From Salisapilia sapeloensis CBS 127946 (lineage: Eukaryota; Protista; Oomycota), in contig JAADVB010000113.1 of assembly GCA_023334545.1 (NCBI GenBank), positions 1-56,342 of the forward strand: 56,342 bases of DNA, written 5' to 3'. The translations under genes were made by a program, and so were the position numbers. Shown piece by piece: positions 14,779-30,800 of the stretch (within the stretch, counting starts at the first letter, position 1; each line of letters starts with the position of its first letter). The notes below the pieces were generated by a model. That model worked only from the letters and a program-made list of their open reading frames with translations. It was not told the origin of the DNA and did no database searches.

Positions 14779-15431
14779 CGTGCTGGGTAGTGTGTTTAAA
14801 GGCGACTCGTGCTGTTGAAAGCTAGTTGGAAATTGAAGCGTCCTGTGTATCTGTGGTCTGCAGAACGAATGTTTATCATAATAACAAAATGATTGTAATC
14901 CCTGTCCAGTCCACGTCTAATGACTTAGCAGGTGTCTATTGATCCAAGTAAATAGTTCGAAACTTGCGTGTGTTCGACAGAATGCATGCCTGTGTGATGC
15001 TCTGCTCATAAAATGGCTGTAGCGCATCCTCTAGTACTCTCTTGGGCATCCAAAGCAAAGCAAGTTTCAGTCGCTCTACAACCATTCCATGTAGCATGGA
15101 GTAGGACCAACACTCACATAGATACAACCGCTGCTCGTCACATCGTTGTGTTGAAGTCTGCCGCACGGAATGTATCTTGGAAACTTCTTCACGGATAAGT
15201 CTCCTGTCGCCAATCAATTCGGTAGTCGGCGGTGCCAAACGTACAAGACAATCAAAATACTTAGATTACAGTGTGTGTGCCGGAAGCATCTAAACACGAG
15301 AATGAGAAGCCCTTGTCATAGCAGATCTTGGGTCGATTCATTGACTACCCGTGGTAACGTGGAGTTCATTTCCGATTCGGATAGCCACTAACCAAGCGAC
15401 CTGCAGTCTACAGCATACAACTAGCTTAGAG

Positions 15432-15716
15432 ATGAAGCCTGATATCTCCACTATCAACTACGCCCGGGACCAAGCTTTTCGAAAGGCCAGAGACCGAAAG
15501 AGGCGTGGCGAACAACACGATATCGCCGGCGAAAAGAAGAAAGCGGAAGGACGCAAGGAGAATCAACCTGGCAAGTTTAACGCGGGAAGCCACGACAGAA
15601 ACGATAAAGACGAAAAGGAAGCTGTCAAGAGCAACGACGAGACCATAGCATCCCGAGGTAAAGCCGGTGCAGCTCAGACCAAGGATAAATCACAGCGTGA
15701 ATGTAGTTGTATGTAA
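15432..15716 (+). CDS. Hypothetical small highly charged protein (94 aa)
   Basis: ATG at 15432: MKPDISTINYARDQAFRKARDRKRRGEQ... Strongly K/E/D/R-rich, with no real gene on the opposite strand to explain it as a shadow. Possible GTATGT donor at the 3' end. Confidence 0.4.
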   Translation: MKPDISTINYARDQAFRKARDRKRRGEQHDIAGEKKKAEGRKENQPGKFNAGSHDRNDKDEKEAVKSNDETIASRGKAGAAQTKDKSQRECSCM

Positions 15717-16184
15717 GAGACACACTGGCGTAAAAGTGGTTGCGCAGAAAGAGCAACAAGCTGCAAAGAGATGCATTAGGGAGCTTTAACTTCCAAAACA
15801 ATCATCCGATTGTCTTCTTTGAAGCTTGAAGCATTCACGTTGTTCCAGCTTTAGTCAATCTGATGGTTCAAAGGTTCAGGCAAAAACAGTGGAAACTTTG
15901 AGTACCCCCACATCATTACTAGTCATAATTTTGAGTATATACACATCTTCCTTCTACAAAAGTTGCCTTCCCAACGTGATCTCTAGCCAAATGTAGTTCT
16001 GAGCGCCAACTTTACCTAAAGCTCATCGAAACCACCACTCGTACAAGACTGACCGAATTAGATGAACGTAGTCACATTGGTACGATTCAAAAAGAGAAGC
16101 AAGTAATTTCAACCAGAGTTATGCATTGAAAATAAATCTATGTATGTCAACTTTATAACGCGTACTCTTTCCACTTCGAGGTTA

Positions 16185-19100
16185 TCACATGCGTACATGC
16201 GTATCAGTCATATCGAGCTGAAAAGACCCGTCTTCGTTCTGGTAATGCACGAGCGATTCTAAATTCCTTGTCGACCTCCTCTCCGTCGGCCCATCCTCTT
16301 CCTTTATCGTGCAGTACACCTTTCCGTCTTCCCCAATCTCAGCTTCTGTCTGCTCGTCAATCTTGTCATCTGCATTCGACACTAGGAAGGATACAAACGT
16401 CGAGTCATTATCCTCTCGTCGCTCTTCCTCTGTCGATACAGCAACAGGCACCTCGACATGGTTCACGCTAGGTCCCGCGACGCGCTTCAAGTCCGTCATA
16501 AGCTTATTGAAACTAGACGCAAAGCCTGCACCTCCTCGTAAGAAGTGGTACAGCTCCGACCTCGCCAGCGTGTAACTCTTGTCCAATCCGATCTCCATGT
16601 CGTTCAGCACGAGTGGGAAGATCGGTTTCCCCTTATCTTCTGCAAACGCAAGTTGGTCTCGCACGAGCTCACTGCCTTGAGTGTTCTTTGAGATGAGAAC
16701 GAGGAAGGCACTACAGTGCGTAATCGCTTCCTTGGCTGCTCGAATCCGGTCCTCAAAGCTCTCTTCCCCGGTCCGACTCCGATCGCCAAAGCAAAGGACG
16801 TTATTTTGCCTCAGCTCATCATACACTTGCGATACAAAGTCGACGTGATAGTCGCCATGACTAAGAAAGACGAAGGATTTATTATTCCCGTCTTCTCCGA
16901 CGGAAAAAGAGTGGAAGAGCTTGGCAAAGCCCTTCACTTGCGGAATCGACGTTGAAGAGCCTTTATGCATCTTCCCTCGACGTTTCGTGCTTCTGCTTTT
17001 CTCCACCTCGTCTCGCACTCCGTCCAAGAGCAGTCGGAACTGAGACTGATACGCATCTCCATCGTACTCGTACTCGACCTTGCGTCCTTCCTTGAGCACG
17101 TTCGTGATGGCACTTTCGAAAGGAATGATCTGGCGAGTGTACAAGTACACTTGCAGGTCTTCATTTAAACGCGCGTGCTCCGTCGAGACAGCTAGGATAG
17201 GCGTACCGACTTGCTTGGCGAGCGCAAGTTCCTTGAGACACCAGTCCGACTTGGTGTAGTCCTCTGTCAGAATGCACAGGACGACTGCAGCACTGGAGAC
17301 ACCTCTCGCGATCTCCTCTCTCCACACGGCACCACCACCGATACCACTCGGATCCATCAAGTCCAGCCACGTCGTGACGTTCGCATTCTCCAAGCTCCTC
17401 CGCAGCTTGCACGCAAACTCGGCGTGTGAGTGCGTGTAGCTGATCATGACATCTCGCTGCCCCGCCGCCTTTTTCACTTCAAACAGCAGTCGCGTGTTGC
17501 TTGTACAGTCTAACGGCCGTTCTCCCTCCTGGTTCATCCGCATGAGGTCACCTCCACAAGCCAGGACAGCCTTGGCGGCACCTTCGTTCTCGTTGCGAAC
17601 AGCAATGTGCAATGCCGTGTCTCCCGTCTGCGGCATCTGGTAGTTCACGTCTGCACCTGCTTGGACAAGGAGCGACAGGAGCTTGTCGCTCGCGTCGGAA
17701 CAGTAAGCAGCACACACGACTGGAGTCATCTTGTCTGCGTCCGGCAAGTCGACTCGCCCCCCTTTCGAGATCAAGACCTGGAGAATGTCGGCGCGATTCA
17801 AACGTGCTGCCCAGTGCACTGGCGTCCGCCCTCGCATGTCCTGGAAGTCAACGTCTGCACCTGCTTCCAACAGCAGCTCAACGCTTTCGAATGCACCGCC
17901 GATGACGCCCCAATGCAGAGGCGTCCGGCGATTCATACCGACGTAACCGTGCTCTCCAAGACAGTTCACGTTCGTCTTTCGACGCAAAAACTTGCGGACG
18001 CCAGACACGTCGTTATCGGCACTTGCAGCGTGGAAAGGAGTGAGCGCAACATCTCCTCCCCACTCTTCTAGCTCCCGTGCGACGGCATAGTTGCCTCGGA
18101 GGTACGCTAGCTGGAGTGCGGACAGAGTGTTTTCATGTCCTGGATCTGGGATCACAAGGTGCTTGGCGCCTCGATGCAAGAGGAGACGGACGACCTCTGG
18201 GTGCTCTGCCATAAACAAAGGCGGCACGCGTTCGTTGCGCTTATTCGATCGAGCGCGTGGGTCCACCTCTGCTCCATGGTCGAGCAGCCACTCGGCAGCC
18301 TTGAGCTGTCCCGTGGCGACGGCACAGTGCAAAGGCGAGACGAGCGTCGTCTTAAAGGTGGATGCGCCTGCCATGTCCTCATCGTCATCTCCAGGACGCG
18401 AGACGAAGCAGTTGGCAAAGCTCCAGAACAAATCGCCTGTACTAAAGCGCATGCGAGAGAACTTGTCTAGTGCGTCGACACGGAATCCTCTCGACAAGAG
18501 TAGTTCCATGGCCTCGATGTTGCCCTGATAGGCAGCTACATGCATTGGATTCTTCTTGGAAGCTCCGACGATGCCAAAGTACAGCTTCGGCTCGGCGTAC
18601 CATGTCGATGGGAAGCCTCTCGTGTCCAATCCACTGGTGTGCGCTAGATCCAACGCCTTTTGCATCTCCCGCAAGTCTCCTAGTCTCGTGGCGCTGTAGA
18701 GTTTCTTCCGGATCGTCTGCCGCAGGACATCTCCTTTGCTCAGCAACGGATCGACGCCTCGGTCCATAACGTGATGCCGGACGTCTCCCGTCTGGTCTCC
18801 TTCTTGAAACGCACCTAGCTGCATTTTTACATGCTCTCGGAAACGAGCAAAGAGGACGAGCTCTGCAAAGACGCTAAAGTAGCACAGGACGGCGACGATG
18901 GCGAAGATAAAGACGGACGCGTTGTCGCAGTGGAAGGCGCCGCCGTTGAAGAACATGTAGAAGAAGAAGACAGCGATGAGAACGAGGTACGTGCATGTGA
19001 TCGCGGCGAAGACTTCACATGCCTGGAAAAAGAGCGTGCGTTTGATCTTGTGTCGATTGCCGGTTGGGTCGACTAGCTGTGTGCGCTTAAACGGTTCCAG

Positions 19101-19676
19101 CGCACGTAGGCCGGATGCAGGCAGAGCGAGGAGAATGACTAGCGGGATCGAGTGATAGACGAGAGCCGAGAAGCCGATCATATTGGCACATGCACTCGCT
19201 CGGAAGGTGTATACGTCGGACGGGTTGTCCAGTACGAAGCCATCTAGACCGTCCTTCCTCAGTCCAACGCCTTCGACTTGGACCGTATAGTAGACGAGTA
19301 CGCCGGCCACCATGACGAGTGCGAGCCAGAAGGCGAGTCGAAGCAGTCGTTTGGCAAAGAAGGAGTTTTTATAGGCAGCGTAGCTAAGAAAGTAACGAGG
19401 TATGGGCGGCTCTTTTCCTAGGAGCTCTTCTCGCATCGAACTAGTGTCTTTCTTGCCCAGTCCGAGAGGTACGGTACGAGGCGTTTGGTCTCGCCCACCA
19501 TGGGTCTGTCTCTGTATAGAAGCGTCGGCCGAGATGAGGTTTGTCTGGTGCTGAATCACGTCAATCGGGACGTCCGACCTCGTGCTCGTGCTCGAGAGCG
19601 ACTGGTCGAGTTGGGGTCGACTGCCATCCGATTCGTACCGTACGAAGTGCGTTTGTACGTTGCGACCGTTCTCCAT
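16185..19676 (-). CDS. Four-transmembrane, ankyrin-repeat, tandem TIR-domain protein
   Basis: Four hydrophobic helices (LAFWLALVMVAGVLVYYTV; IGFSALVYHSIPLVILLALPA; VFAAITCTYLVLIAVFFFYMFF; VFIFAIVAVLCYFSVFAELVLF). About 9 ankyrin repeats (NPMHVAA, SPLHCAV, TPFHAAS, TPLHWGV, TPVHWAA, TALHIAV). TIR1 DVMISY...WLD...WCLKEL; TIR2 FVFLSH...LVRDQL...KPIFPL. Intronless; ATG at 19676. Confidence 0.9.
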   Translation of the reverse strand: MENGRNVQTHFVRYESDGSRPQLDQSLSSTSTRSDVPIDVIQHQTNLISADASIQRQTHGGRDQTPRTVPLGLGKKDTSSMREELLGKEPPIPRYFLSYAAYKNSFFAKRLLRLAFWLALVMVAGVLVYYTVQVEGVGLRKDGLDGFVLDNPSDVYTFRASACANMIGFSALVYHSIPLVILLALPASGLRALEPFKRTQLVDPTGNRHKIKRTLFFQACEVFAAITCTYLVLIAVFFFYMFFNGGAFHCDNASVFIFAIVAVLCYFSVFAELVLFARFREHVKMQLGAFQEGDQTGDVRHHVMDRGVDPLLSKGDVLRQTIRKKLYSATRLGDLREMQKALDLAHTSGLDTRGFPSTWYAEPKLYFGIVGASKKNPMHVAAYQGNIEAMELLLSRGFRVDALDKFSRMRFSTGDLFWSFANCFVSRPGDDDEDMAGASTFKTTLVSPLHCAVATGQLKAAEWLLDHGAEVDPRARSNKRNERVPPLFMAEHPEVVRLLLHRGAKHLVIPDPGHENTLSALQLAYLRGNYAVARELEEWGGDVALTPFHAASADNDVSGVRKFLRRKTNVNCLGEHGYVGMNRRTPLHWGVIGGAFESVELLLEAGADVDFQDMRGRTPVHWAARLNRADILQVLISKGGRVDLPDADKMTPVVCAAYCSDASDKLLSLLVQAGADVNYQMPQTGDTALHIAVRNENEGAAKAVLACGGDLMRMNQEGERPLDCTSNTRLLFEVKKAAGQRDVMISYTHSHAEFACKLRRSLENANVTTWLDLMDPSGIGGGAVWREEIARGVSSAAVVLCILTEDYTKSDWCLKELALAKQVGTPILAVSTEHARLNEDLQVYLYTRQIIPFESAITNVLKEGRKVEYEYDGDAYQSQFRLLLDGVRDEVEKSRSTKRRGKMHKGSSTSIPQVKGFAKLFHSFSVGEDGNNKSFVFLSHGDYHVDFVSQVYDELRQNNVLCFGDRSRTGEESFEDRIRAAKEAITHCSAFLVLISKNTQGSELVRDQLAFAEDKGKPIFPLVLNDMEIGLDKSYTLARSELYHFLRGGAGFASSFNKLMTDLKRVAGPSVNHVEVPVAVSTEEERREDNDSTFVSFLVSNADDKIDEQTEAEIGEDGKVYCTIKEEDGPTERRSTRNLESLVHYQNEDGSFQLDMTDTHVRM

Positions 19677-21398
19677 GCTCGCTCGGATGACGGAATGAAG
19701 CACCCGAGGACGTGTGCGCTAGTGGAAGCCTATAAAATTATGCAAGTAGATCGAGTCGTCACCTAACTCGGGAGTCGATAGCAGATGGTAGGAAGAATCC
19801 ACTTGCTACTTGTACCAAGAGAGTACAAATGAGTACGAACGACTTTTCCAACACGCTGCAGCGGATGGACGTGGCGAGTATAATCTGGGTTGGAAGTTTT
19901 TATGTGTTGGAGATACGAGGTCGAAGATGGAAGGAAGAGCGGTTGAATTTTTAAAAGTGTTCTATATCTAGATGAGAGGCAGTGTCTCCACCTAGCCTCG
20001 CGCGTGGTACAGTACGTAGGTGGGATTCGGTCGTTTGTGATGGTGTAGATCCTCACCGTGCTATGTAACTGTTTGCAGGAGAGGAAGGCGGTGTATCGAG
20101 TTAGTAGTAGCTGCTGACGCAATTAGCGACCTTTGTCTAGTGGCATATCAAGTCTCAGATCGAGTTCATGATTCTTCCAGGTGCACTGCATGATCACAGT
20201 GGGAGTAGGAAGTATCCATTGGCAAATCCAATGGTAACTGTAGAAACTTCCTTGTGTGAAGAGCCTGTTTAGCTCTGGAAAAGTCCATTAGCTACGACCA
20301 TAGACACAGGTTAGATATGCGTTACATCTCATCGAAATGGTCTTCCCTACGAGTCCCAGTAGTCGTCTCCGTGGCTGGGGTGAGTGCGACACCTGAATGA
20401 CGATTGCAACCATTAATCCGTTATCTAGGTGCAGGTGGTAGCCCGATTGTAAATCGCGAAAGCTACTTGTTCTAAATCGCAGCCGACGATGGGTTGCATC
20501 GGGCGACGGAGATTTTGATGGGTTCTCCATCGACAATAAAAAGCGTCCACTTGGCGTTGCTTCTCTCTTGCTTATAAAAATGGATAACTTTTATCTCGGT
20601 GTATGGAAACATGGAATGAAGTGCTCTCATACCACGATTGTTACGAGGGCATGTCAAATGCAAATTGGAACTCCGAGATACCAGAATTCTGAGCTTCGTA
20701 AAGATCACCGTGTGACCGAGTATTTTGTTTCCACTTCTAAAGCGCAATGGATAGTTTGACGAGTTGTAAATGCCTTTGGTGGAGCCATTCATGGATACGT
20801 CGACGCAGTTGTACACTGGATACAAGCACCTTTGGTCTTGTTTTTATCTGCTTAGGTGGACAGTAGTGTATCCGTAGATTGCATGCAAGGCTGCTCTCTA
20901 ACTCAACAGTGTTTAAAGCTCATATAATGTCTTTCATGGGATCTTTTTCGTATACTAGTTTCTGGCATGTACGTCGACGATCAAGTATCGAACCTGTGCT
21001 TCCGTACCACCACAAGCTTAAATGCAGGATTAAAATTCGCTGTGCACTTGAACCCACTGTATCATCAGAACAAACATCCTCTCACACATCACTTCAAGTG
21101 CAAATCACTACCAACGTACTTGATTTTGTCAGCAATCACATTAAGTCGTGCTTCCTTCCGACCCTATTAACTGTCCATCATGCTACTCCCAATCGAGACC
21201 ATCGACCACCTCTTACTCGTCCATAATCCAAATTCGACTCTACTCTTCCTACGTTCAAGATAAAACGAAATCAAGTGCAACGCAATCGATATTCTTGTCA
21301 ATCAAAACTGAGATTCTCGTGTGTATTGTGCTCCCAAGTGCACCAAACCAAACAGGAAAAAACTTGTCTTTCTACGTGATGTCATGCAATTGAACGTC

Positions 21399-23111
21399 TT
21401 ACAGTTCCAACTCTTTCGAGTATCGCTGATGGTCGTCGTATTCATTGATCGACATCTCCGACTCGGACATGCTGACGGTCGAAAACTGGCGGATGCCCTG
21501 GTGGGATCCGATCATGTCCTCCGTCTCGCGCTGGCCGTTCGGACCGTCATAGGCCTTGGGATCGATGATGTCAAATTCGCTCTGATTCGTGCTCGCAGAT
21601 GTGCCTGTCAAGTCCCCACTCTGAAGCACCGACATGCTCTGCACTGACGCGTTGCTCTCCAAGTCACCACTGAAGCTCATGCCTTCATCCATACGTGGGT
21701 TCTGAGACGCGCGACTGTCATGACGCGCGTACTCGTTCGCGGCAAAGGTCGAGTATCGGCCATCAATGTCCTCATCCACAAATGCCTGCTGTCCACCCGT
21801 CGCGGCTGGGGCAGGAGCCATGTTGCCACCGTACTGTTGGCTCGTCTGGGCAGGTTGGCTGTAGTAGTCATTATGGTACTGGTCGCCATCGGATCCATTG
21901 TAGACGATATTGGTCATCCGGTCGCCATCAAACTCGACAACCGTCGAGTTCAGATTGTTTGTGGAAACCGAGTTCTGGGGACGAGTGTCTGGATATCCTA
22001 GCATGGAGTTCTGTTGCGGCTGCGGAGCTCCGTTAGATGCTCCCTGGACATTTGCTCCGTAGCCATTGTACGCGTTCGTGTCATAGCCACCGTATTGGTT
22101 CGATTGGTAATCAGTGTTTGACTGTGCCGTGCTGGCGACACTCGGGGTAGCATCGTGCAAATAGCCAGCATCCTTTTGACCATAGTTGTTCGTCGCCATG
22201 GCAGGGTTACGAGGAGAGTTGGGCGTCTTCATGTCGAGCGAGTCTTCATCCTCTCGACGCTTCTTGACACGGTATCCGATGAACAAGGCAACGAGAAGGA
22301 CAGCACAAACTGCTGCAGCAATAACAACAATGTTCAAGTAAGCAGGCGTTTCCGATGACTTGGCTTCGCCGTTCGTGACCATCTTGTTGCTACCGGAAGA
22401 TGACTCGCTGGATCCATCATCACCATAGTTGGTGCTGCTGCTGGTAGGGGAAGCCCATGCAGAAGCATCGTCCGTAGATGTTGCTGGAGCGGTGGTGGTT
22501 GGAGATGGCGTATCGTCCTCCGCTGGTGGTGGAGCCGTCGTCGTCGGGGATGGACTGGTCGTGGCCGGAGCTTCCGTCGTTGCTGGCGGTTCCGTCGGCT
22601 TTTCGGCAGAAGCGCTATCGTCCGAGACGTCGGAGCCTTCGTCCGAGTCTTTCTTTGTGGGGCTAGAGCCCTTAGAGGAAGAGGAGTCTTTCTTTCCAGT
22701 GGAGGAGGACGACGAGTCCTTTTCAGACGAGGACGATGAATCCTTTTTTTTAGACGGAATGGAGGGCTTCTTGGCATCCTCGGAGGATGAGCCATCGTCA
22801 AGTGATCCCGTCTCCTTCTCAGAGGAAGAGTCGGACGTCTTGGATGAGGTAGTTTTGGAAGGTGTCTCCGACGAATCTTCGCTACAGTCGGCGACAGGGT
22901 CATCGAACGGGCACTTACCATTGTTCTTGGAGTAGCACACGAACACGCTGCTCTGTTTGTATACGCAAGGGGGACAGTTTCCACTCTTGAGTTCACATTT
23001 GATTCCGCCACCTGCGAGACACGTACCGGACTCACAAATATCACTGGCAGCCTGCGACGGCTGGATCATCATGGCGAGCGCCATGAAGGCAAGCGCGCCT
23101 ACCTTAAACAT
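21399..23111 (-). CDS. Single-pass membrane protein: signal peptide, 8-Cys domain, Ser/Thr/Pro/Asp mucin-like stalk, TM helix, long disordered cytoplasmic tail
   Basis: MFKVGALAFMALAMMIQPSQA signal; CESGTC...KC...GNCPPC...VC...KCP...DC; S/T/P/D stalk; TM IVVIAAAVCAVLLVALFIGY followed by the RVKKRR stop-transfer; tail ends YSKELEL. Confidence 0.88.
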   Translation of the reverse strand: MFKVGALAFMALAMMIQPSQAASDICESGTCLAGGGIKCELKSGNCPPCVYKQSSVFVCYSKNNGKCPFDDPVADCSEDSSETPSKTTSSKTSDSSSEKETGSLDDGSSSEDAKKPSIPSKKKDSSSSSEKDSSSSSTGKKDSSSSKGSSPTKKDSDEGSDVSDDSASAEKPTEPPATTEAPATTSPSPTTTAPPPAEDDTPSPTTTAPATSTDDASAWASPTSSSTNYGDDGSSESSSGSNKMVTNGEAKSSETPAYLNIVVIAAAVCAVLLVALFIGYRVKKRREDEDSLDMKTPNSPRNPAMATNNYGQKDAGYLHDATPSVASTAQSNTDYQSNQYGGYDTNAYNGYGANVQGASNGAPQPQQNSMLGYPDTRPQNSVSTNNLNSTVVEFDGDRMTNIVYNGSDGDQYHNDYYSQPAQTSQQYGGNMAPAPAATGGQQAFVDEDIDGRYSTFAANEYARHDSRASQNPRMDEGMSFSGDLESNASVQSMSVLQSGDLTGTSASTNQSEFDIIDPKAYDGPNGQRETEDMIGSHQGIRQFSTVSMSESEMSINEYDDHQRYSKELEL

Positions 23112-24212
23112 TCTTCCACTAGAGTGTTTTAAATACAAGGAAGGGCGGATAATGTCGTGAACTAACTGCGGTTGGAGCGGTATGGCCAGCGCACAGCGAT
23201 TTATTTACCGAGTGGCATAAAACGAAAGAATTTAGACCGAGCAAGGGAGCGAGTAACGGAGACTTTGTCAATCGGTCGTTACGTTGTGCTGGTCGACGAC
23301 AAAGTAGCGACGGAGTATGCCAATAGACGGAGAGGAAGCAGGAATCGAATGTTCTGAAAGGCAAATGGTGGTTGCCAGGTTTAAGGGTTCATGCGTCGGA
23401 TCGACGAGATGACTGTATGTTATGGGCTTTTGCTATACGTAGTCTCGGTATAGCTCTCGTTCATTTGTACCTGATCAGCTGAGATCTGATTAACGAGAGA
23501 GGTAGGTTGTTCACGCTACTAGGGTTGAAGCTAGTACGTGAGCGCATTGCTTGCCGTCATCTTCATGCAGAGTAGATGTATACTATCGAGAGCGTTTTCC
23601 TTTCGAAAGATAGGATCCAGTTTACTTTCTGCATGTTGAGATGGACCATGAGTGTAGCTTCAATCGAATGACACTTCGTCTGTACACGAGCACTGTATCT
23701 CTTGTCCATCGCTGTAAGCTTTGAATCGTATGCAAATTGTTCGGACGAAAGACACGTATTTCTCATCGCGTTGAAAGGTTACTTGGCGCCCACAGTAGCA
23801 AGCAAAAGTTTCAAGACAGTTACGATGAGACGTCTAGGATGCACATGCATCTGCGACTGTATATGCTGGCGTAAGACAGACAATCTTTACGGCGTACGTG
23901 AGAAACCGATGCCATGCGATCTTTCTAAATTTGACCCGATTTCTTCTCTACTCTAGCTACCTCCACTGTCTTTAAATCCAACAAGTTGCAACAGTTAAAT
24001 TAAATTATTATATATTGTAGCTATTTAGACAGAATATACAGCTCATTTGGCTCGTAGTAACCTCTTCCTTGGCACATACGACCTATCCAGAGCAGCGTAT
24101 CTCAAGTTTTCCTCTACTATCACGCAGCCACCTTTGTAAATTTTACAGCAATAGTCGGAGTCGACAGCATAACAGACACGCGATGGAGACGATGGATCGA
24201 TTAAGACGTTCA

Positions 24213-25298
24213 TTAAATGTTATATTCAAGAGAATCATTTGAATATCTGTCGGACGGTACGGCCGACTCGATCATTTCCTGTACATGGTCTAATCGCTCT
24301 TGCTGTAAACTTTCACATCGAACGACCGTATCCGTGATGAGCGTTAATATCTCGGCATGCAGCTCTTCCTGCTCACGACACCAGAGCTCCAGCTCCTCCG
24401 CGACGGTCGTCGTCCCGGACGAATTAGACGATACGGATCCAGAAGCCTTTATCTCCGCATCGGTGCTAGCTTCTTCCTCAAAGGGGGAGAACATGAGACG
24501 GGAAGGAGCCGACTGGTACATCTTCGCGTCGTGTCCGCCATAATGCGGTTGAGTGGACTTTGCGTGTGCCCTGGACGACGAAGGTGGGGAAGTCGGCGCG
24601 GCTGAAGGAGGTCGGAAACTAAACGTAATCGGTCGCTGCAGACGACCGATTTTATCTGCAATGTCAGCAAAGGCCCAGTCATGGACGTTGGTGCCATTCA
24701 CTGAGAAGAGTTCATCGCCCAACCGGCAGGATGTCAACCCCGAGACGATCCCATCGACCTGCTGTAACACGGCTATCTGTGCTCCGACGCCGGTCTTACT
24801 ATGAAGGCGACGCAGGGAGATGCCGCATTCGCCACTGATCCACGTAGCCGAGTACTCTTGTGTAGGTATTACCGTCGTACTGCTCCTGATGCGGCTCATA
24901 CTACGAGAGAACTGATGGAGAGTATTTGTTTGCTGCTTTGGTGTGTTGTGATGACGTCGGCCCATGGATCTTAAGGACGACGTCTTCTCTGCTTTCTTGG
25001 AGAAAGTATACGAAGAGCGCGAAGCCTCCGTCTCGGTCTCTCTCGTGAAGTAAACTGAAGGCTCACGAGAGGTGATGTACCTGCTAGGCTGTGGTGTGTA
25101 CTCTTCCAGTTCATCGGGAGAGTCTTGTCGAGACGATGAGAGGTCTTTATAATGGCGGCTGGAAGACTCGACGCTCGTCCGGAGCTTACGAAGCTCTGAG
25201 ATGAGTTCCGGCAGGTTACGTGCGACTACTTCTTCTGTATCTGCATTAAAAGTGGTTGCAGTTCTAGTCCCATCGTCGAGGAAAGCCTGACTAGCCAT
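24213..25298 (-). CDS. PDZ-like domain protein with C-terminal coiled coil
   Basis: WISGECGISL...GAQIAV...CRLGDELFSVNGTNV...DIADKI...RPITFSFR resembles a PDZ fold (GDxIxxVNG); flanked by Ser-rich disorder and a helical C-terminus. Confidence 0.78.
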   Translation of the reverse strand: MASQAFLDDGTRTATTFNADTEEVVARNLPELISELRKLRTSVESSSRHYKDLSSSRQDSPDELEEYTPQPSRYITSREPSVYFTRETETEASRSSYTFSKKAEKTSSLRSMGRRHHNTPKQQTNTLHQFSRSMSRIRSSTTVIPTQEYSATWISGECGISLRRLHSKTGVGAQIAVLQQVDGIVSGLTSCRLGDELFSVNGTNVHDWAFADIADKIGRLQRPITFSFRPPSAAPTSPPSSSRAHAKSTQPHYGGHDAKMYQSAPSRLMFSPFEEEASTDAEIKASGSVSSNSSGTTTVAEELELWCREQEELHAEILTLITDTVVRCESLQQERLDHVQEMIESAVPSDRYSNDSLEYNI

Positions 25299-26640
25299 TG
25301 CCTCGTTCTACTTGTCACGAGCGTGATGGAAAAACGTACGATAGCAAGTTAATTCGTCGCTTACCAGTCTACTAGTCCGAAACGACGAATGATAGAAAAG
25401 TAACTGGGCACAAACACTACAAATGTCAGTTGGCGGAGTATATCGTCAAGATAGAGCCTGGTAAGCGCCCAGTGGGATCAGTCGTGGGCAGGACGGACTT
25501 GCGTGTGAACTAAGTCGAGGCGGGTGGTATCGTAGAAATGGTACAAAAGGGGCACGCTGAGAACGATGGGTCAAGTTCAAATAGGTGTGATGATTTGCAA
25601 TTTAATGAAGAGATAGCTTCAGCTTTCCCGAGTTGTTAATTGGAATCCTCGCAGGTAGCACAAGGATTGATGAGACCATCTCTGGAGCGATTAGACTACT
25701 GGATGTGGAGAACAGAAAAACGGAAGTGGCGTATGAGATGCAAGCTATGATCCAGTTCTCTCTTGCATGTGCTTAGCATCATCGATTAATTTCTAACGGT
25801 GCGTGATGACTGAAAGGATTGGTGGAGGCAGAAACTTGCAAGGCTCGCAATGGACGAACGGGCAGCCATCGTGCACTTGCAGTAGAACCCTACCGTATGT
25901 CCGCGCCGCAGCAAAGTGCTGTCATTCCGTCGAGGAAACTTCCGGTGTAACGACGCGAACATAAAGCTTACGTAGATCTGACGTGAAAATCTTCTGGACA
26001 TCTCGACTGCTCTGACAAATCTACGCTTTCTAAAAAGAAATTTTCTACTGCGAGTCGTTCTAAAAGGGTGCTTCCATGTTCTTCCGCGCTGGCCAGAAGC
26101 ACTTCCGACTAGATAAACTTGAACTTTTTGACTACAAGTGACTTCGCGAGGCGGCGAACTACCATATGAGCTTAAGCGTCATGTCTCGGCTTTGTCCTGA
26201 GATCGCGGCTCCATGTCCTTTTCCTTTCGCCAAGTGTCTTATCGGCATAGAGATTACATTCGCCAACTGGATTGGCTTTATCCATTGAGTTCCACAGAGC
26301 TTCTTAATCTAACTCTTATCATGTCGTACACCACTCGATGTCGGTTCGAATACGCGAAACGGAACTTTGCGACGCCCTCGTCTGCGCGATTTGTAGCATT
26401 GCAGTAGATTGTTGAGACCCGATCCGAGCAATTGTTTCCACGGATCATGTACGCATAAACAGTCAACTGGGCTGCGGCATACCTATCTTTCATGTCCATG
26501 CTCCCACGATAGGCATCTGGTGTCCGTAGGTATTTGGCATGTCTGCGTTTGACGCTTCCCATCCCTCACTTTTGCCGACGCTACACCCATCCAACTATCT
26601 GGTAGCGTGACATCACGTTTGAATAAACTATTCGTTGCAG

Positions 26641-26656
26641 ATCACTTTTCGATTTA
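26641..26656 (+). promoter_or_regulatory. INR+FPR-like core promoter upstream of the RWP-RK gene
   Basis: atcacttttcgattta (TCACTTT variant of INR plus ATTT) about 40-55 nt before the ATG at 26695. Confidence 0.55.
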
Positions 26657-26694
26657 AGACGTACACATCTAGCCTATACGTGGTACTGGAAGAC

Positions 26695-27639
26695 ATGGTC
26701 GCTGATATGCCATCCAAAAAGCGGATGCACGCCAACGAAGCTTTCAATGACAGCGTCATGCCAGCAACGAAGAAACTTCGCACGTCCAAAGGAAGTCGAC
26801 GAAAAAGCGCTGCATCCGGCAATGCGACTGCGTCAAGTCGTGTCACGCTCGAAGCACTCAAACCTCACTTTGAAAAACCGCTGGCAAAAGTAGCCCAAGA
26901 ATTCGGCATTTGCGTCACCTTGCTCAAGAAGATATGTCGCCGACACGGCATCTCGCGCTGGCCCCACCGCCAAATCACTGGTCTGCGCAAAAGTATTGCG
27001 TCGATGGAACATGCTATCGGATACTTCGAAGGTGCTCGCCGCGAGTCGTACGCCGAACAACTCAACAAGCAGCGACTCAAGCTTGCTGCTTTACTAGAAG
27101 ATCCGACCCAGTGTGAATCTCCGATCAAGGATGCATCCAATGGCACAGCTGCATCTGCCAGCTTTGATGCTCCAAGTCAATCGGACTCTCTCCCTGACTA
27201 CGTTGAACAGCCCAGTGCTCGATCTCATTGGTCGGAAGAGCACTACCCGGACCATCATTTCCAGTCGCAAGCACCATCGCAGTCCGTCCACCGATCGATG
27301 CCAACAGCCCTGCCGTCAATCCAATCCGAGTATCGATCGACCACCTCATATCCATCCCATTTGGTACATGAGCAGCATCCGAGATCGCTCCGGCCAGTAC
27401 AAACGCCGGCATTGGCCTCTGTATTGCCACGTGTGGCGTCCTCTCGACCACCGGCAACGTCCACTTTCGCTTCATCTATGTCTTTGGTGCATGGAAATGC
27501 TTTACCATCCGTAAGCTCCGTCCATGCGCATCACTCGGCTCCAATTCCAGCTCTCCAGATGAGGTCGCATCCGAGGTTACCACCGCTCTCGTCGCTCATC
27601 GATCAGCATTCGATAGCTGCTCGTAGTTCAGTTCGGTAG
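26695..27639 (+). CDS. RWP-RK domain transcription factor
   Basis: VTLEALKPHFEKPLAKVAQEFGICVTLLKKICRRHGISRWPHRQITGL is a canonical RWP-RK domain, with a basic NLS-like N-terminus and a P/S/H-rich C-terminus. Confidence 0.93.
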   Translation: MVADMPSKKRMHANEAFNDSVMPATKKLRTSKGSRRKSAASGNATASSRVTLEALKPHFEKPLAKVAQEFGICVTLLKKICRRHGISRWPHRQITGLRKSIASMEHAIGYFEGARRESYAEQLNKQRLKLAALLEDPTQCESPIKDASNGTAASASFDAPSQSDSLPDYVEQPSARSHWSEEHYPDHHFQSQAPSQSVHRSMPTALPSIQSEYRSTTSYPSHLVHEQHPRSLRPVQTPALASVLPRVASSRPPATSTFASSMSLVHGNALPSVSSVHAHHSAPIPALQMRSHPRLPPLSSLIDQHSIAARSSVR

Positions 27640-27803
27640 ACTACAAGCATTTAATTTGCATAGGTAGATCAAAAACAAGTACAAAAAATGATGTAAATAG
27701 GAAATGGAGCAAATTTATTGTGCTATCATCTACCCAAAGCGTTTCCACATTTCCATTTCCAAAAGTAAGGAAAATAGTTTATTTATAAAAACCTTCTGAA
27801 GGA

Positions 27804-30800
27804 ATGGAAGTCGTCGAGACGACACCAAAGAATCAGTGCGATGAGTCACTAGATCTTGCTGTCAAACCTTTGGATAGCGCGCTCGGTTTCACACAGCATG
27901 ATGAGACCGATCGTAACGACGTAGCGGAGCCTTCCCTTACGATCACCGTCGACAATGCTGACGTTAGTCGTCGAGACACACCAGACGGAAATGCAGAAGG
28001 CTGGGATATGCATCGCTTCATCCAGACGTGGGCAATTGATCCGGAGCTAGAGAAGTCGTTGCCATATCTGGCTCGAGCTAAACGAGCACCAGGAGAATCA
28101 GCGGCGGAAAAGTTTTTGCGTATAACTCAACTAAAGCTTCCAGAGTTACCGGGAGAAAATATCTCTACTGAAAGTGGAATTGCTTGCAGCGATGACTTTA
28201 GCCAGGAACAACAACTTAGTAAAGATACGAAAGACAAGTATTTCAGTGCGACGGCCAAGACCGAGTGCTATGCTATCTTTCGTAAGCTCGCAAAGCAAAG
28301 ATACCTGCCCAACTCGAATATTTCGCAGCACATCGCACAACGCCACGAGGAGCCAACGCCAGACGAAGGGATGAGCGACGATGGATCCACCGAAATTACA
28401 AAAGACCATGACAGCAAGACCGGACTGTTTGCACGACAATTTACGGCACGGCACAAGTTTTCGTCCTTGTGTCTGGAGAAAAACTTGCCTCCATGTCTCC
28501 GATTGATCATACGAAACTACTTTTCGCCCGAGATCAATCTATCTCACATGTCTATCGGCGATGACTTTGCCTGTATCTTGGCTGCATGTCTAGTAGATCT
28601 ACCTCTAGTCACATCACTAAACGTCCGCAATAATCGTCTCAAAGATGAAGGGCTGCAGTCGATTATCGATGTCGTAGTCAGCAAGAAAGACTTGTACCAT
28701 CTCGATTTGTCTGAGAACAAAGTAGACGGCGAAGCTTCTGCTTCTTTAGCTGCCTACCTCGGGTCTCCACTTTGCGCACTTCAAACACTCAAATTAAGCC
28801 ATGCTGACGTCGATGATGGTGAACTTGCAGCATTCACACAAGCTCTACATATTAACAAGTCGTTGCGGTCATTAGATCTATCTCATAACCTCATTGGCAC
28901 GAGTGAAAGTCTCAATGTTGTCCGACCATCTATCGTTACAGGTGGAGAAGCTCTCGCTACAATGCTGGCTGAGAACTATACACTCGTATCGTTAGACCTT
29001 TCCTGGAACTACATTCGACTTGGTAGTGCCGTCGAAATCGGTCGCTCCCTTGCGTATAACAATGGCCTTCGAGAACTAAATCTGGCGTACAATGCTTTTG
29101 GCGATACTGGTTCACAAGCAGTGGGTGAAGCCTTGCTGTCGAATCTTTGTCTCGAGAAACTCATCATGAATAATAACAATATTCCGACGCGTGCCGCATT
29201 AGCTCTTGCAAGCGGAATCAAACTCAGCGCAAAGCTCGTCTATATCGATCTAAGCGGTAACCCACTTGGTCAAGCTGGTGGGCGAGCATTATTGCACGCA
29301 GTCGCTTCCTGTACAGAGCGTCAAGTTCACGTTCTTATGGAAGGCTGTAACTTTGAAGCTCTAGACACAGAAGCATTTGACCCAACGGAGTCGACCGGGT
29401 CGTACGATTTAAACATGGCTGTGCCATACGAAAGAGCTGTCGCCTTGGAGCTACTGCATTTAGCAAACACGAGGCAAGGCTGTAAATTCCTTTCAATCGT
29501 ACATACTTCTACCGAAACGAAGGCGACACGGACGATAAAGGTTGAGCTACGAGACATTTCGGATCATAGTACCCAGCGCCGACTATTGAAGACAGCAGGC
29601 ATATTAACTCAATCAGAATATAACGAAGAGAAGATGAAGAGTATTAAAATGGATCGAGACTCTCTGGAAGATTTATTTCATGATTTGGATGAAGATGACT
29701 CTGGATGCATTGATAAAGCAGAACTTCGTCGTGGTTTGCAATCGCTCGGTTTGGACGTTCGGGACGATCAAATACCTCGTTTCATTGCCCAATATGACTT
29801 GGACAGCTCCGGTACAATTGAGCTGGAAGAGTTTATTGAGCTCATTAGCAGCCTTAATCTCGAGAGTGGAACCATTGTCCGTGAATGTGTCGACCTCGAG
29901 ACGAATCGGAGATTTGATATACCAACAGAAGGTCGGCTCCGAATTGACTTTGTTGACTTCCACGTCTCCACCGACGACGACAGTGCTCACTCTCAAACCG
30001 GTGTGGAACGACTAATTGAGAATATATCGACAAGTACGAACAAGACGCAGATGCTGGGCATGGCCAAGTCTGGTTTGTACTTTAAAATGTCAGAGGCGCA
30101 GCGACTACTGGAAAGTGTCTCGGATGTCTATGATCCAGTCCAAGCGGTCACTTTGCTACTCCCAAATATGGTCGATTCGAAAAACGCGTATCGACTGATT
30201 GAGCACAACTTGACATTCGGACAGCGCGTGCGTGTGCAGCATATCATGGGTTATGCTCTCCAACCTATTCTTGGTTTAAGTACCGGTCATTATAAGCTGG
30301 ATCTATCGAACGAATTTGATCGAATGACACTCAAAAAGCTCGTGGAGAACAGCAACCGGACTGCATTTTTACGTAAGAAAGAGAACAAGAAAGATACTAG
30401 CCAGCATTGTAACTTCCAGGGATTCCGCAATGAGACGCTGCATGGCAAGTCGATTGAGATCGAGCCCAAGTTACTGGACGGGTTGACCAAGTTTGGCATG
30501 ATTGAATTCGACTATGTGCAGTTCGGAAGAAGGCCTGGGCGACCAATTTCAAAGAAAAGGTTTGATCAAGTGCTTTATGAATGTCAATTCCATCGCATGC
30601 CAAGAGCCATGGGTCTCCGATCGGAAGAAGCTCTGAAACAAAATAAAGTACCGGTGTTAAAGAAACAAGGGACTTCTAGACGTAAAAGTGCGAGCGGACC
30701 TATCCGTAGACGACAGTCGACCGTAGCATTTCCAAAAGTACTCCGACATACTAAAGGCATATTTGAAGAATTGGACAAGATAAAATCTATCAAGAATTAT

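What the first reader, a model, noticed from the sequence alone, without database searches (positions are those of the whole stretch)
16185..19676. Membrane-anchored ankyrin-TIR-TIR protein: candidate oomycete immune or cell-death NADase receptor
One intronless ORF fuses 4 TM helices, about 9 ankyrin repeats and two TIR domains. TIR1 keeps DVMISY, WLD and WCLKEL, with the Glu (17229-17231) that is catalytic in SARM1, plant TNL and bacterial Thoeris/CBASS TIR NADases. Repeat sensor plus TIR effector plus membrane anchor is the logic of innate immune receptors, and I know of no characterised TIR signalling system in oomycetes. Hypothesis: ankyrin-sensed ligand drives TIR oligomerisation and NAD+ cleavage, giving signalling or cell death (antiviral, anti-mycoparasite or non-self recognition).
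Basis: partly seen in the sequence, partly recalled or inferred. Interest (0 to 1): 0.8.

Follow-up and report, generated by a model that had tools for sequence, protein, structure and literature searches.

The report
Oomycete membrane-anchored ankyrin tandem-TIR protein
This is a real, expressed, intronless oomycete gene for a membrane protein with four membrane helices, about ten ankyrin repeats and two TIR domains (one enzyme-like, one with the key glutamate replaced); it belongs to an old, slowly evolving, uncharacterised oomycete family that looks like a regulated NAD-cleaving enzyme, not a fast-evolving pathogen sensor.

Summary
A 1163-residue protein is encoded without introns on the minus strand (16185-19676). 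RNA contigs cover it in one colinear piece. It has a disordered N-terminus, an unclassified four-helix membrane module, about ten cytosolic ankyrin repeats and two TIR domains.

TIR1 keeps Ser746, Asp772, Ser810 and Glu816. These align with four active-site residues of the solved NADase Cat1 and do not vary across 118-119 of 121 aligned relatives. TIR2 has an equally fixed Gln1008 at the glutamate position.

The gene is the positional orthologue of a Pythium oligandrum gene. The family is found across oomycetes, with at least three old paralogue groups.

The immune-receptor reading is only partly supported. An NAD-cleaving TIR1 is plausible. But the ankyrin domain is strongly conserved (dN/dS about 0.02-0.05 among Phytophthora orthologues), unlike a diversifying sensor. 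The best model is a SARM1-like regulated membrane NADase or signal-nucleotide synthase with a pseudo-enzyme partner TIR. The "TRP channel" and "RxLR effector" database names for relatives are not supported.

A 2022 review mentions the family as uncharacterised ankyrin-TIR proteins. I found no functional study. This scan also noted the Glu/Gln pair and the membrane module on the same stretch.

The parts
16124..19943 (-). Transcript (outer limits of the RNA contigs): 5' leader about 240-267 nt, 3' UTR about 22-61 nt, no intron
   Evidence: single colinear contigs 16152-19943, 16124-19921 and 16163-19914 in three RNA-type runs, with no joints; no upstream ATG in the leader.
16185..19676 (-). Coding sequence, 1163 aa plus the TGA stop
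19392..19676 (-). N-terminal hydrophilic, poorly conserved region (residues 1-95). No signal peptide. Predicted cytosolic.
   Evidence: consensus identity 0-0.24; sequence; no hydrophobic segment before residue 106.
18777..19391 (-). Four-helix membrane module (residues 96-300). TM1 106-131, TM2 162-187, a basic cytosolic beta-hairpin loop 196-213, TM3 215-243, TM4 253-286, then the conserved juxtamembrane motif FARFREHxKMQLGAF. Invariant Cys163, Cys220 and Cys250.
   Evidence: No known fold or family match.
17472..18719 (-). Cytosolic ankyrin-repeat solenoid, about 9-11 repeats (residues about 320-735), with an insert of about 40 residues after repeat 1
   Evidence: Ank, Ank_2, Ank_3, Ank_4, Ank_5; repeats read by eye; high conservation; dN/dS 0.016-0.045.
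17067..17459 (-). TIR1 (residues about 740-870), catalytic-type, with pocket residues Ser746, Asp772, Ser810 and Glu816
   Evidence: TIR_2 at 743-835. Cat1 E 2e-6. Cat1 active-site residues; invariance. Z 15-16 to the Hydra TRR-2, RPV1/RUN1 and SARM1 TIR domains.
17229..17231 (-). Codon GAA of Glu816, aligned with the catalytic Glu74 of Cat1
   Evidence: Glu in 119 of 121 aligned family rows, the other two being gaps.
16962..17060 (-). Long conserved helix between the two TIRs (residues about 873-905, motif QFRLLLDGVRDE)
   Evidence: helix 149-181 of the model; near-invariant columns.
16467..16880 (-). TIR2 (residues about 933-1070), a TIR fold with Gln1008 in place of the catalytic Glu. Ser939, Asp965 and Ser1002 are largely kept.
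   Evidence: second TIR_2 stretch, and ThsB_TIR at 25 bits; fold. Z 14-16 to SPARTA, MyD88, RPS4 and SARM1 TIRs. Gln in 118 of 121.
16653..16655 (-). Codon CAA of Gln1008, at the position of the catalytic Glu in TIR2
16188..16466 (-). Acidic, poorly conserved C-terminal tail (residues 1071-1163)
   Evidence: consensus identity 0.03-0.33; low pLDDT at the end of the model.

Best explanation
The gene encodes a conserved oomycete membrane protein. Its N-terminus and its whole ankyrin-TIR-TIR portion face the cytosol, held on a four-helix membrane module.

TIR1 is most likely an NAD(P)+-cleaving TIR enzyme (glycohydrolase or cyclase). TIR2 is a fixed pseudo-enzyme (Glu replaced by Gln) that probably acts as the obligatory partner or regulatory half of an asymmetric TIR pair.

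The strongly conserved ankyrin solenoid probably keeps the enzyme off, or couples it to a conserved endogenous partner or metabolite. This is the role the ARM domain plays in SARM1.

On activation and clustering in the membrane, the enzyme would lower NAD+ locally or make an ADP-ribose-derived signal. The biological role could be stress, developmental or cell-death signalling, possibly downstream of other sensors. That role is not known.

Shown here: the gene model and its expression, the architecture, both TIR folds, conservation of the pocket residues, the Gln in TIR2, purifying selection, and orthology.

Inferred: enzyme activity, topology, the regulatory roles of TIR2 and the ankyrin repeats, and the output.
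For: Architecture and expression.

TIR1 as a catalytic-type TIR:
- Its only sequence match among solved structures is the NADase Cat1.
- Cat1 pocket residues S7, D33, S68 and E74 align with S746, D772, S810 and E816. Alanine mutants of D33, S68 and E74 were defective.
- These four residues are invariant in 118-119 of 121 family rows and in most divergent representatives.
- NCBIfam places TIR1 nearest to bacterial defence TIR enzymes: Thoeris III ThcB4 at 1e-8 and retron-TIR at 2e-7, both far below family cut-offs.
- Structural Z scores are 15-16 to SARM1, RUN1/RPV1 and SPARTA TIRs.

TIR2: Gln1008 is fixed in 118 of 121 rows.

Conservation. TIR1 dN/dS is 0.002-0.019 and ankyrin dN/dS is 0.016-0.045. 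Consensus identity is 0.6-0.89 from the ankyrin region through TIR1.

Topology. The family-conserved basic cytosolic loop and juxtamembrane helix fit an N-in, C-in topology.

Orthology. The tree follows the species phylogeny within the query's clade, and microsynteny with P. oligandrum is conserved.
Against: There is no biochemical evidence for any member of the family.

The glutamate is necessary but not sufficient. From my own recollection, not tested here, animal TLR-type TIRs carry a similar SxWCxxE motif yet are reported to lack NADase activity. The single best structural match of TIR1 is a TLR-type TIR, Hydra TRR-2 (Z 16.3).

The relative position of TIR1 and TIR2 in the model is not confident (pTM 0.52), so the intramolecular-pair idea is unsupported by structure.

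dS is saturated in most comparisons, and domain-wide dN/dS can hide a few positively selected sites.

No downstream reader of a TIR product is known in oomycetes.
Confidence: 0.55

Rival explanations
1. The protein is an innate immune or non-self receptor. The ankyrin repeats bind a pathogen- or virus-derived ligand, which drives TIR oligomerisation, NAD+ loss and cell death.
For: Repeat domain plus TIR plus membrane anchor is the layout of many immune receptors. TIR1 looks catalytic. There are several paralogues per genome, with local tandem expansions: six clade-B copies in Globisporangium splendens, four of them on one contig. The best Swiss-Prot structural hit is Dictyostelium TirA at Foldseek E 7.5e-9, though the TM-score is only 0.29.
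Against: The ankyrin domain is highly conserved across all paralogue groups and oomycete orders and is under strong purifying selection. Orthologues are near one-to-one, and the tree follows the species tree within the query's clade. The repeats are cytosolic, so they cannot see extracellular ligands. Conservation does not exclude a role as a conserved executor downstream of other sensors; that version merges with the best explanation.
Confidence: 0.15
2. The protein is a non-enzymatic scaffold. Both TIRs act only as protein-protein assembly modules, as in TLR/MyD88 signalling, and recruit other factors to a membrane.
For: The best structural match of TIR1 is a TLR-type TIR, and TIR2 matches MyD88 and IL-1R-family TIRs with Z 14-15. 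TIR2 lacks the glutamate. Glu alone does not prove activity.
Against: Four small polar residues that line the NAD pocket in Cat1 are absolutely fixed in TIR1 across the family. That is what one expects of a catalytic pocket, not of an interface. By sequence, TIR1 groups with TIR_2 and bacterial enzyme-type TIRs: TIR_2 scores 101 bits against 30 bits for PF01582.
Confidence: 0.2
3. The protein is a TRP-type Ca2+ channel, as several database records name its relatives.
For: Source names such as 'Transient receptor potential Ca2 channel' on several orthologues. A TIGR00870 trp hit.
Against: The trp hit scores 15.8 bits against a cut-off of 498.75 and covers a single ankyrin repeat (residues 376-402). 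There are four helices, not six, they lie N-terminal to the ankyrin repeats, and no ion-transport domain is detected. The membrane module has no significant fold match in the PDB (E no better than 0.1) and at best a borderline hit to one unnamed protein in AlphaFold DB (E 6e-3), with TM-scores at or below 0.5.
Confidence: 0.03
4. The protein is a secreted RxLR-type effector, as the Hyaloperonospora arabidopsidis orthologue is named in one source.
For: The source name of P0014. An RLLR string at residues 110-113.
Against: There is no signal peptide. The N-terminal 105 residues are hydrophilic, and RLLR lies at the cytosolic edge of TM1. The protein is a polytopic membrane protein conserved in saprotrophic and animal-pathogenic oomycetes.
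Confidence: 0.01

Closest known systems
SARM1 (animal ARM-SAM-SAM-TIR NADase)
   Same: Both join a helical-repeat domain to a TIR with the conserved glutamate. Both are highly conserved orthologues, not diversifying families. Both are associated with a membrane. TIR1 superposes on SARM1 residues 561-700 with Z about 15.6 and 18-19% identity.
   Different: This protein has no SAM oligomerisation domains. It has ankyrin repeats instead of ARM repeats, a four-helix integral membrane module, and a second TIR with Gln. It is not a sequence-level orthologue: Pfam detects no ARM or SAM.
Cat1 and other bacterial TIR_2-type defence NADases (Thoeris ThsB/ThcB4, retron-TIR, SPARTA TIR-APAZ)
   Same: These are the closest by sequence. 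Cat1 matches at E 2e-6 with the SDWC..EL motif and four pocket residues shared. NCBIfam gives partial hits to ThcB4 and retron-TIR. TIR2 superposes best on the SPARTA TIR (Z 15.9).
   Different: This is a eukaryotic, multi-domain membrane protein with no CARF, Argonaute or ThsA partner. All NCBIfam scores are far below family cut-offs.
Oomycete 'uncharacterized ankyrin repeat-TIR proteins' (Lapin et al. 2022, PMC9153377; UniProt 'TIR domain-containing protein' entries such as PITG_05763, PITG_11666, PITG_20820, SDRG_09247)
   Same: This is the family the gene belongs to. Identity is 44-62% over 85-99% of the length, with the same 4TM-Ank-TIR-TIR order.
   Different: The window's copy sits on a long branch with at most 62% identity to any database member. 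I found no description in the literature of the membrane module, the fixed Glu/Gln tandem or the paralogue structure.
Toll-like receptors and IL-1 receptors
   Same: A membrane protein with a repeat domain and a cytosolic TIR. The top structural hit of TIR1 is the Hydra TRR-2 TIR (Z 16.3).
   Different: TLRs have an extracellular LRR or Ig sensor and a single membrane span. Here the repeats are cytosolic ankyrin repeats, there are four spans, and there are two TIRs.
Plant TIR-NLRs and TIR-only proteins (RUN1/RPV1, RPP1, RPS4)
   Same: They share the S-x-W-C-L-x-E-L alpha-C motif (from recollection) and match structurally at Z 14-15.7. The RPS4/RRS1 pairing of an active and an inactive TIR is a functional precedent for a Glu/Gln pair (established knowledge; analogy only).
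   Different: This protein has no NB-ARC or LRR. The two TIRs are fused in one chain, and the protein is membrane-anchored.
Dictyostelium TirA
   Same: A protist TIR protein. It is the best Swiss-Prot structural hit to the tandem-TIR model (Foldseek E 7.5e-9).
   Different: The TM-score is only 0.29, and no shared architecture was shown. This is a lead only.

Membership tests
TIR domain superfamily (Pfam TIR_2 PF13676 / TIR PF01582) | Profile match above the curated cut-off | tested here: met
   TIR_2 scores 101.1 bits against a cut-off of 28, in two stretches. TIR scores 29.9 against 21.3.
TIR domain superfamily (Pfam TIR_2 PF13676 / TIR PF01582) | Flavodoxin-like alpha/beta TIR fold in both domains | tested here: met
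   AlphaFold2 pLDDT 83. VIA-align Z 14-16.3 to solved TIR domains for model residues 16-165 and 206-347.
Catalytic TIR NADases (SARM1, plant, bacterial) | Catalytic glutamate in the alpha-C W-x-x-x-E motif | tested here: met
   In TIR1, Glu816 aligns with Cat1 Glu74 and is invariant. In TIR2 the feature is not met: Gln1008 is fixed in 118 of 121 rows.
Catalytic TIR NADases (SARM1, plant, bacterial) | Other residues lining the NAD pocket | tested here: met
   Cat1 S7, D33 and S68 align with S746, D772 and S810, all invariant. Cat1 H8, N9 and N10 are not conserved (Y, T and H here).
Catalytic TIR NADases (SARM1, plant, bacterial) | Glutamate-dependent NAD(P)+ cleavage that depends on TIR self-association | not testable with these tools
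   This needs enzyme assays. The model's inter-domain geometry is not confident (pTM 0.52).
SARM1 orthologues | ARM repeats plus tandem SAM domains before the TIR | tested here: not met
   Pfam finds only Ank-type and TIR-type families.
Toll-like receptors | Extracellular LRR ectodomain, a single membrane span and one cytosolic TIR | tested here: not met
   No LRR hit, four membrane helices, cytosolic ankyrin repeats and two TIRs.
TRP cation channels | Six-helix channel domain with a pore loop, and a family-level profile match | tested here: not met
   TIGR00870 scores 15.8 bits against a cut-off of 498.75, on one ankyrin repeat only. There are four helices with no significant fold match in the PDB or AlphaFold DB.
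Thoeris ThsB | ThsB_TIR profile match, plus a ThsA-type partner that reads the product | tested here: inconclusive
   PF08937 scores 25 bits against 21.2, on part of TIR2 only. NF058526 ThcB4 scores 34.5 against 220. I did not search for a partner.
RxLR effectors | N-terminal signal peptide followed by RxLR(-dEER) | tested here: not met
   The first 105 residues are hydrophilic. The only R-x-L-R string (110-113) lies at the edge of TM1.
Oomycete 4TM-Ank-TIR-TIR family | Full-length colinear similarity, including the 4TM module motifs and the Glu/Gln tandem | tested here: met
   More than 120 oomycete proteins match at E reported as 0 down to 3e-254, with 44-62% identity. The module motifs are invariant. 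The gene falls in clade A of the tree and shares synteny with P. oligandrum.

The most novel reading that the evidence does not exclude
The protein is a self-contained signalling machine of a kind not yet described. TIR2 (Gln) supplies the missing half of TIR1's active site within one chain, or acts as an allosteric nucleotide sensor. The unclassified four-helix module does more than anchor: it oligomerises into a pore or transducer, gated by TIR assembly or by the TIR product. NAD+ cleavage would then be wired directly to ion flux or membrane permeabilisation in oomycetes.
Probability: 0.12. Interest if true: 0.8.

Novelty: new variant of a known kind. Interest (0 to 1): 0.5.

Why it matters
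TIR domains are now known as NAD-cleaving signal enzymes in animals, plants and bacteria. Nothing is known about them in oomycetes, a group that includes major crop and fish pathogens.

This family is present in every oomycete order sampled, in several conserved paralogues. Its catalytic-type pocket and its pseudo-enzyme partner domain are both fixed, and it is expressed.

If TIR1 is active, oomycetes have a conserved membrane-bound NAD+/ADP-ribose signalling or cell-death switch that could be studied and perhaps targeted. The fixed Glu/Gln tandem would also be a natural single-chain model of the asymmetric TIR pairs seen in plant resistosomes.

The correction matters too. The conservation pattern argues against a classical diversifying immune receptor, and the database names 'TRP channel' and 'RxLR effector candidate' are misleading.

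Tried and rejected
Classifying the membrane module. None of these gave a usable match:
- Foldseek against the PDB: best E 0.1, TM-score at or below 0.42, generic four-helix proteins such as TARP.
- Foldseek against AlphaFold DB clusters: best E 6e-3, TM 0.42/0.50, to an unnamed 186-aa protein.
- ESM Atlas features: scores at or below 0.79, in the noise range.

A paralogue in the window. tblastn found only the gene itself.

Foldseek with the two-domain TIR model. The top of the list was swamped by unrelated two-lobed alpha/beta proteins such as SIS domains. The VIA-align second look resolved this.

A possible '4TM-Ank-TIR-NADAR' fusion in Aphanomyces astaci (P0292). I rejected it as evidence for three reasons. 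It is a multi-exon model spanning 4.6 kb. Other strains' proteins lack NADAR. A separate NADAR gene lies next door.

A wider spread of the Ank-TIR-TIR cassette beyond oomycetes.
- One EukProt protein labelled Salpingoeca kvevrii, and one MMETSP transcript, carry a soluble version.
- The only relatives of the former are oomycete proteins.
- Transfer or contamination cannot be told apart.

Literature searches by locus tag (PITG_05763, PITG_11666, PITG_20820, SPRG_03838, PPTG_00186, PPTG_06082) found nothing.

Phrase searches found only the 2022 review.

TIR2 alone has no sequence match among solved structures.


Full report
**1. Observation**

The window has a 1172-codon open frame at 16185..19703 on the minus strand. 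The first ATG is at 19674-19676 and the TGA stop at 16185-16187.

Three RNA-type public runs of the same organism each hold one colinear contig of 3.75-3.8 kb, from 16124/16152/16163 to 19914-19943. None has a joint, and the neighbouring genes lie on separate contigs. A DNA run is flat across the whole stretch. The runs are only guessed to be RNA, but the pattern is that of a transcript. The 267-nt leader has no upstream ATG. So the intronless gene model and its start are well supported, and the gene is expressed.

Pfam confirms ankyrin repeats (Ank E 5.7e-37, Ank_2 4.8e-35) and two TIR_2 stretches (E 7.4e-29). Hydropathy and an AlphaFold2 model (pLDDT 83, pTM 0.78) give four long membrane helices at residues 106-131, 162-187, 215-243 and 253-286. 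By eye there are about 9-11 ankyrin repeats between residues about 320 and 735.

**2. What family it belongs to**

A search of 5.8 billion proteins returned more than 120 full-length relatives with the same domain order. Identity is 44-62%. Every named hit is an oomycete: Globisporangium, Pythium, Phytophthora, downy mildews, Albugo, Saprolegnia, Achlya or Aphanomyces. No hit was identical, so this genome's proteins are not in that collection.

A FastTree tree shows three old groups in the peronosporalean lineages:
- clade A, about 1250 aa, which holds the query and an Albugo sequence;
- clade B, about 1100 aa;
- clade C, about 1550 aa, with an insert between the two TIRs.

There are also two Saprolegniales groups. 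Within clade A the branching follows the species phylogeny. The query sits on a long branch between Albugo and Pythium.

The locus is syntenic with the clade-A gene of Pythium oligandrum. The LRR-EF-hand gene (57% identity), the PDZ-like gene and the mucin-like gene that flank it there also flank it here.

A profile search with the tandem TIR region against 1.84 billion representatives found 105 proteins below 1e-30. Hits that also carry the membrane module and have a name are all oomycete: Aphanomyces, Lagenidium, Globisporangium, Pythium and Saprolegnia.

Two soluble outliers carry a colinear Ank-TIR(Glu)-TIR(Gln) cassette without the membrane module. One is a EukProt protein labelled Salpingoeca kvevrii (PA domain plus ankyrin plus two TIRs; 30% identity over query residues 446-1038, E 7e-74). 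The other is an MMETSP transcript. The only relatives of the former are oomycete proteins. I cannot tell gene transfer from contamination.

**3. The TIR domains**

TIR1's only sequence match among solved structures is Cat1, a CRISPR-associated TIR NADase (E 2e-6). The Cat1 paper lists S7, H8, N9, N10, D33, S68 and E74 as lining the NADase site, and reports that alanine mutants of N10, D33, S68 and E74 are defective (PMC12162218).

In the alignment, S7, D33, S68 and E74 fall on Ser746, Asp772, Ser810 and Glu816. In a 121-row family alignment these positions are invariant, as are the surrounding motifs RDVMISY, TxWLD and WCLKELALAK (118-119 rows, the rest gaps). They also hold in most divergent representatives.

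TIR2 has the same fold but carries Gln1008 at the glutamate position. This Gln is fixed in 118 of 121 rows. Ser939, Asp965 and Ser1002 are largely kept.

The AlphaFold2 model of the tandem (pLDDT 83) gives two TIR folds joined by a beta-hairpin and a long conserved helix. Its pTM of 0.52 means the mutual orientation is not reliable.

VIA-align gives these matches:
- TIR1: Z 16.3 to Hydra TRR-2, 15.7 to RPV1, 15.6 to human SARM1.
- TIR2: 15.9 to the SPARTA TIR, 14.9 to MyD88, and 14.5 to both RPS4 and SARM1.

So both are true TIR domains. TIR1 has a catalytic-type pocket and TIR2 is a conserved pseudo-enzyme. Structure alone does not separate enzyme-type from scaffold-type TIRs.

**4. The membrane module**

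The module is conserved across the family. Invariant features include Cys163, Cys220 and Cys250, a basic loop PASGLRxFEPFKR...KIKRT between TM2 and TM3 that the model folds as a beta-hairpin, and the juxtamembrane motif FARFREHxKMQLGAF.

The basic loop and the basic stretch after TM4 fit the positive-inside rule. That gives an N-in, C-in topology, which places the ankyrin repeats and the TIRs in the cytosol. This is inference.

No known fold or family matched. The 'TRP Ca2+ channel' name on several relatives rests on ankyrin similarity only. The trp profile scores 15.8 bits against a cut-off of 498.75, on a single repeat.

**5. Evolutionary mode**

Consensus identity is 0.6-0.84 through the ankyrin region and 0.82-0.89 in TIR1, across paralogues that predate the split of the oomycete orders.

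Among three intronless Phytophthora orthologues, Nei-Gojobori dN/dS values are:
- ankyrin region: 0.016-0.045;
- TIR1: 0.002-0.019;
- TIR2: 0.03-0.11;
- whole gene: 0.03-0.07.

dS is saturated in most pairs, so the ratios are rough. But dN itself is low: about 0.05 in the ankyrin region and 0.003-0.02 in TIR1. This is strong purifying selection on the presumed sensor domain. It is the opposite of what diversifying immune receptors show.

**6. Mechanism**

The best-supported reading is a conserved, membrane-anchored, regulated TIR enzyme. TIR1 cleaves NAD(P)+. TIR2 is a fixed non-catalytic partner or regulator. The ankyrin solenoid holds the enzyme off or couples it to a conserved endogenous partner or metabolite, as the ARM domain does in SARM1. 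I give this about 0.55.

Rivals:
- A purely scaffolding TIR protein (0.2). The glutamate is necessary, not sufficient. From memory, TLR-type TIRs with a similar motif lack NADase activity.
The ankyrin conservation weakens it. A role as a conserved cell-death executor downstream of other sensors is not excluded, and that version merges with the main model.
- A TRP-type channel (0.03) and an RxLR effector (0.01). Both fail their membership tests. The only R-x-L-R string lies at the edge of TM1, and there is no signal peptide.

**7. Novelty**

The family is annotated in databases as 'TIR domain-containing protein'. [quoted passage not shown] Searches by phrase and by locus tag found no functional study.

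I did not find any description of the four-helix module, the fixed Glu/Gln tandem, the paralogue structure or the purifying selection. Other first-stage notes of this scan on the same stretch had already flagged the Glu-to-Gln pair and the 4TM module. I tested and confirmed both. Another note reports a second TM-ANK-TIR gene elsewhere in this genome. I did not check it.

I rate this a new variant of a known kind: a TIR signalling enzyme in an undescribed architecture. Interest is about 0.5. It is a solid, testable lead in a lineage with no TIR biology, but it is neither a new principle nor the diversifying immune receptor that was proposed.

**Limits**
- The tree is FastTree only, and the query has a long branch.
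- dS is saturated.
- The RNA runs are coded and only guessed to be RNA.
- No coordinates of the models could be inspected for contacts.
- No biochemical evidence exists for any member of the family.

Noticed in passing
window 21399-31655, and L001 13970-23672: The genes next to the TIR gene are a mucin-like gene (21399-23138), a PDZ-like gene (24213-25298) and an LRR-EF-hand gene (27804-31655, 57% identical). All also neighbour the orthologous TIR gene in Pythium oligandrum, in rearranged order. A Lagenidium giganteum gene model (P0155, 2513 aa) even fuses the TIR gene with LRR and EF-hand domains. So this neighbourhood is conserved across genera.
   Followed up: partly
L005 387-5836 (Aphanomyces astaci): One A. 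astaci model (P0292) reads as 4TM-Ank-TIR-like-NADAR. It is probably a fusion of the TIR gene with an adjacent NADAR gene. Other strains lack the NADAR part, and a separate 185-aa NADAR gene lies next door. The NADAR part is most similar to bacterial proteins (about 60% identity).
   Followed up: partly
P0178 (EukProt, Salpingoeca kvevrii) and P0191 (MMETSP transcript): These are soluble proteins with the same Ank-TIR(Glu)-TIR(Gln) cassette but other N-terminal parts (a PA domain, and LRR_6). The only relatives of P0178 in the database are oomycete proteins. This is either horizontal transfer or contamination of the transcriptome.
   Followed up: partly
P0014 (Hyaloperonospora arabidopsidis orthologue); window residues 110-113 (nt 19338-19349): The orthologue is named 'RxLR effector candidate' in one source. 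The likely cause is the string RLLR at the cytosolic edge of TM1. There is no signal peptide, so the name looks like a pattern-match artefact.
   Followed up: yes
locus tags of Pythium, Phytophthora, Bremia, Plasmopara and Globisporangium relatives: Clade-A, clade-C and a further TIR-bearing family member lie within about 10-35 genes of each other in several genomes. Examples are Poli38472_010456/_010465/_010467, PINS_up005281/5289/5292 and F443_00230/00259/00262. The 56-kb window holds only one member.
   Followed up: partly
window 15346-15924 and 19987-20900: Separate short RNA contigs flank the gene. One covers 15346-15924, over a lysine-rich 121-codon frame at 15351-15716. One run supports a 63-nt GT..AG intron at 20015-20079 in the upstream neighbour, at low depth.
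   Followed up: no
P0193, P0198, P0217, P0234 and similar: These are large proteins of unknown taxon (Logan assemblies) with arrays of 3-7 TIR domains that all keep the glutamate (S..D..S-x-Y..E pattern). They are the next-nearest relatives of the tandem TIR profile outside the oomycete family.
   Followed up: no
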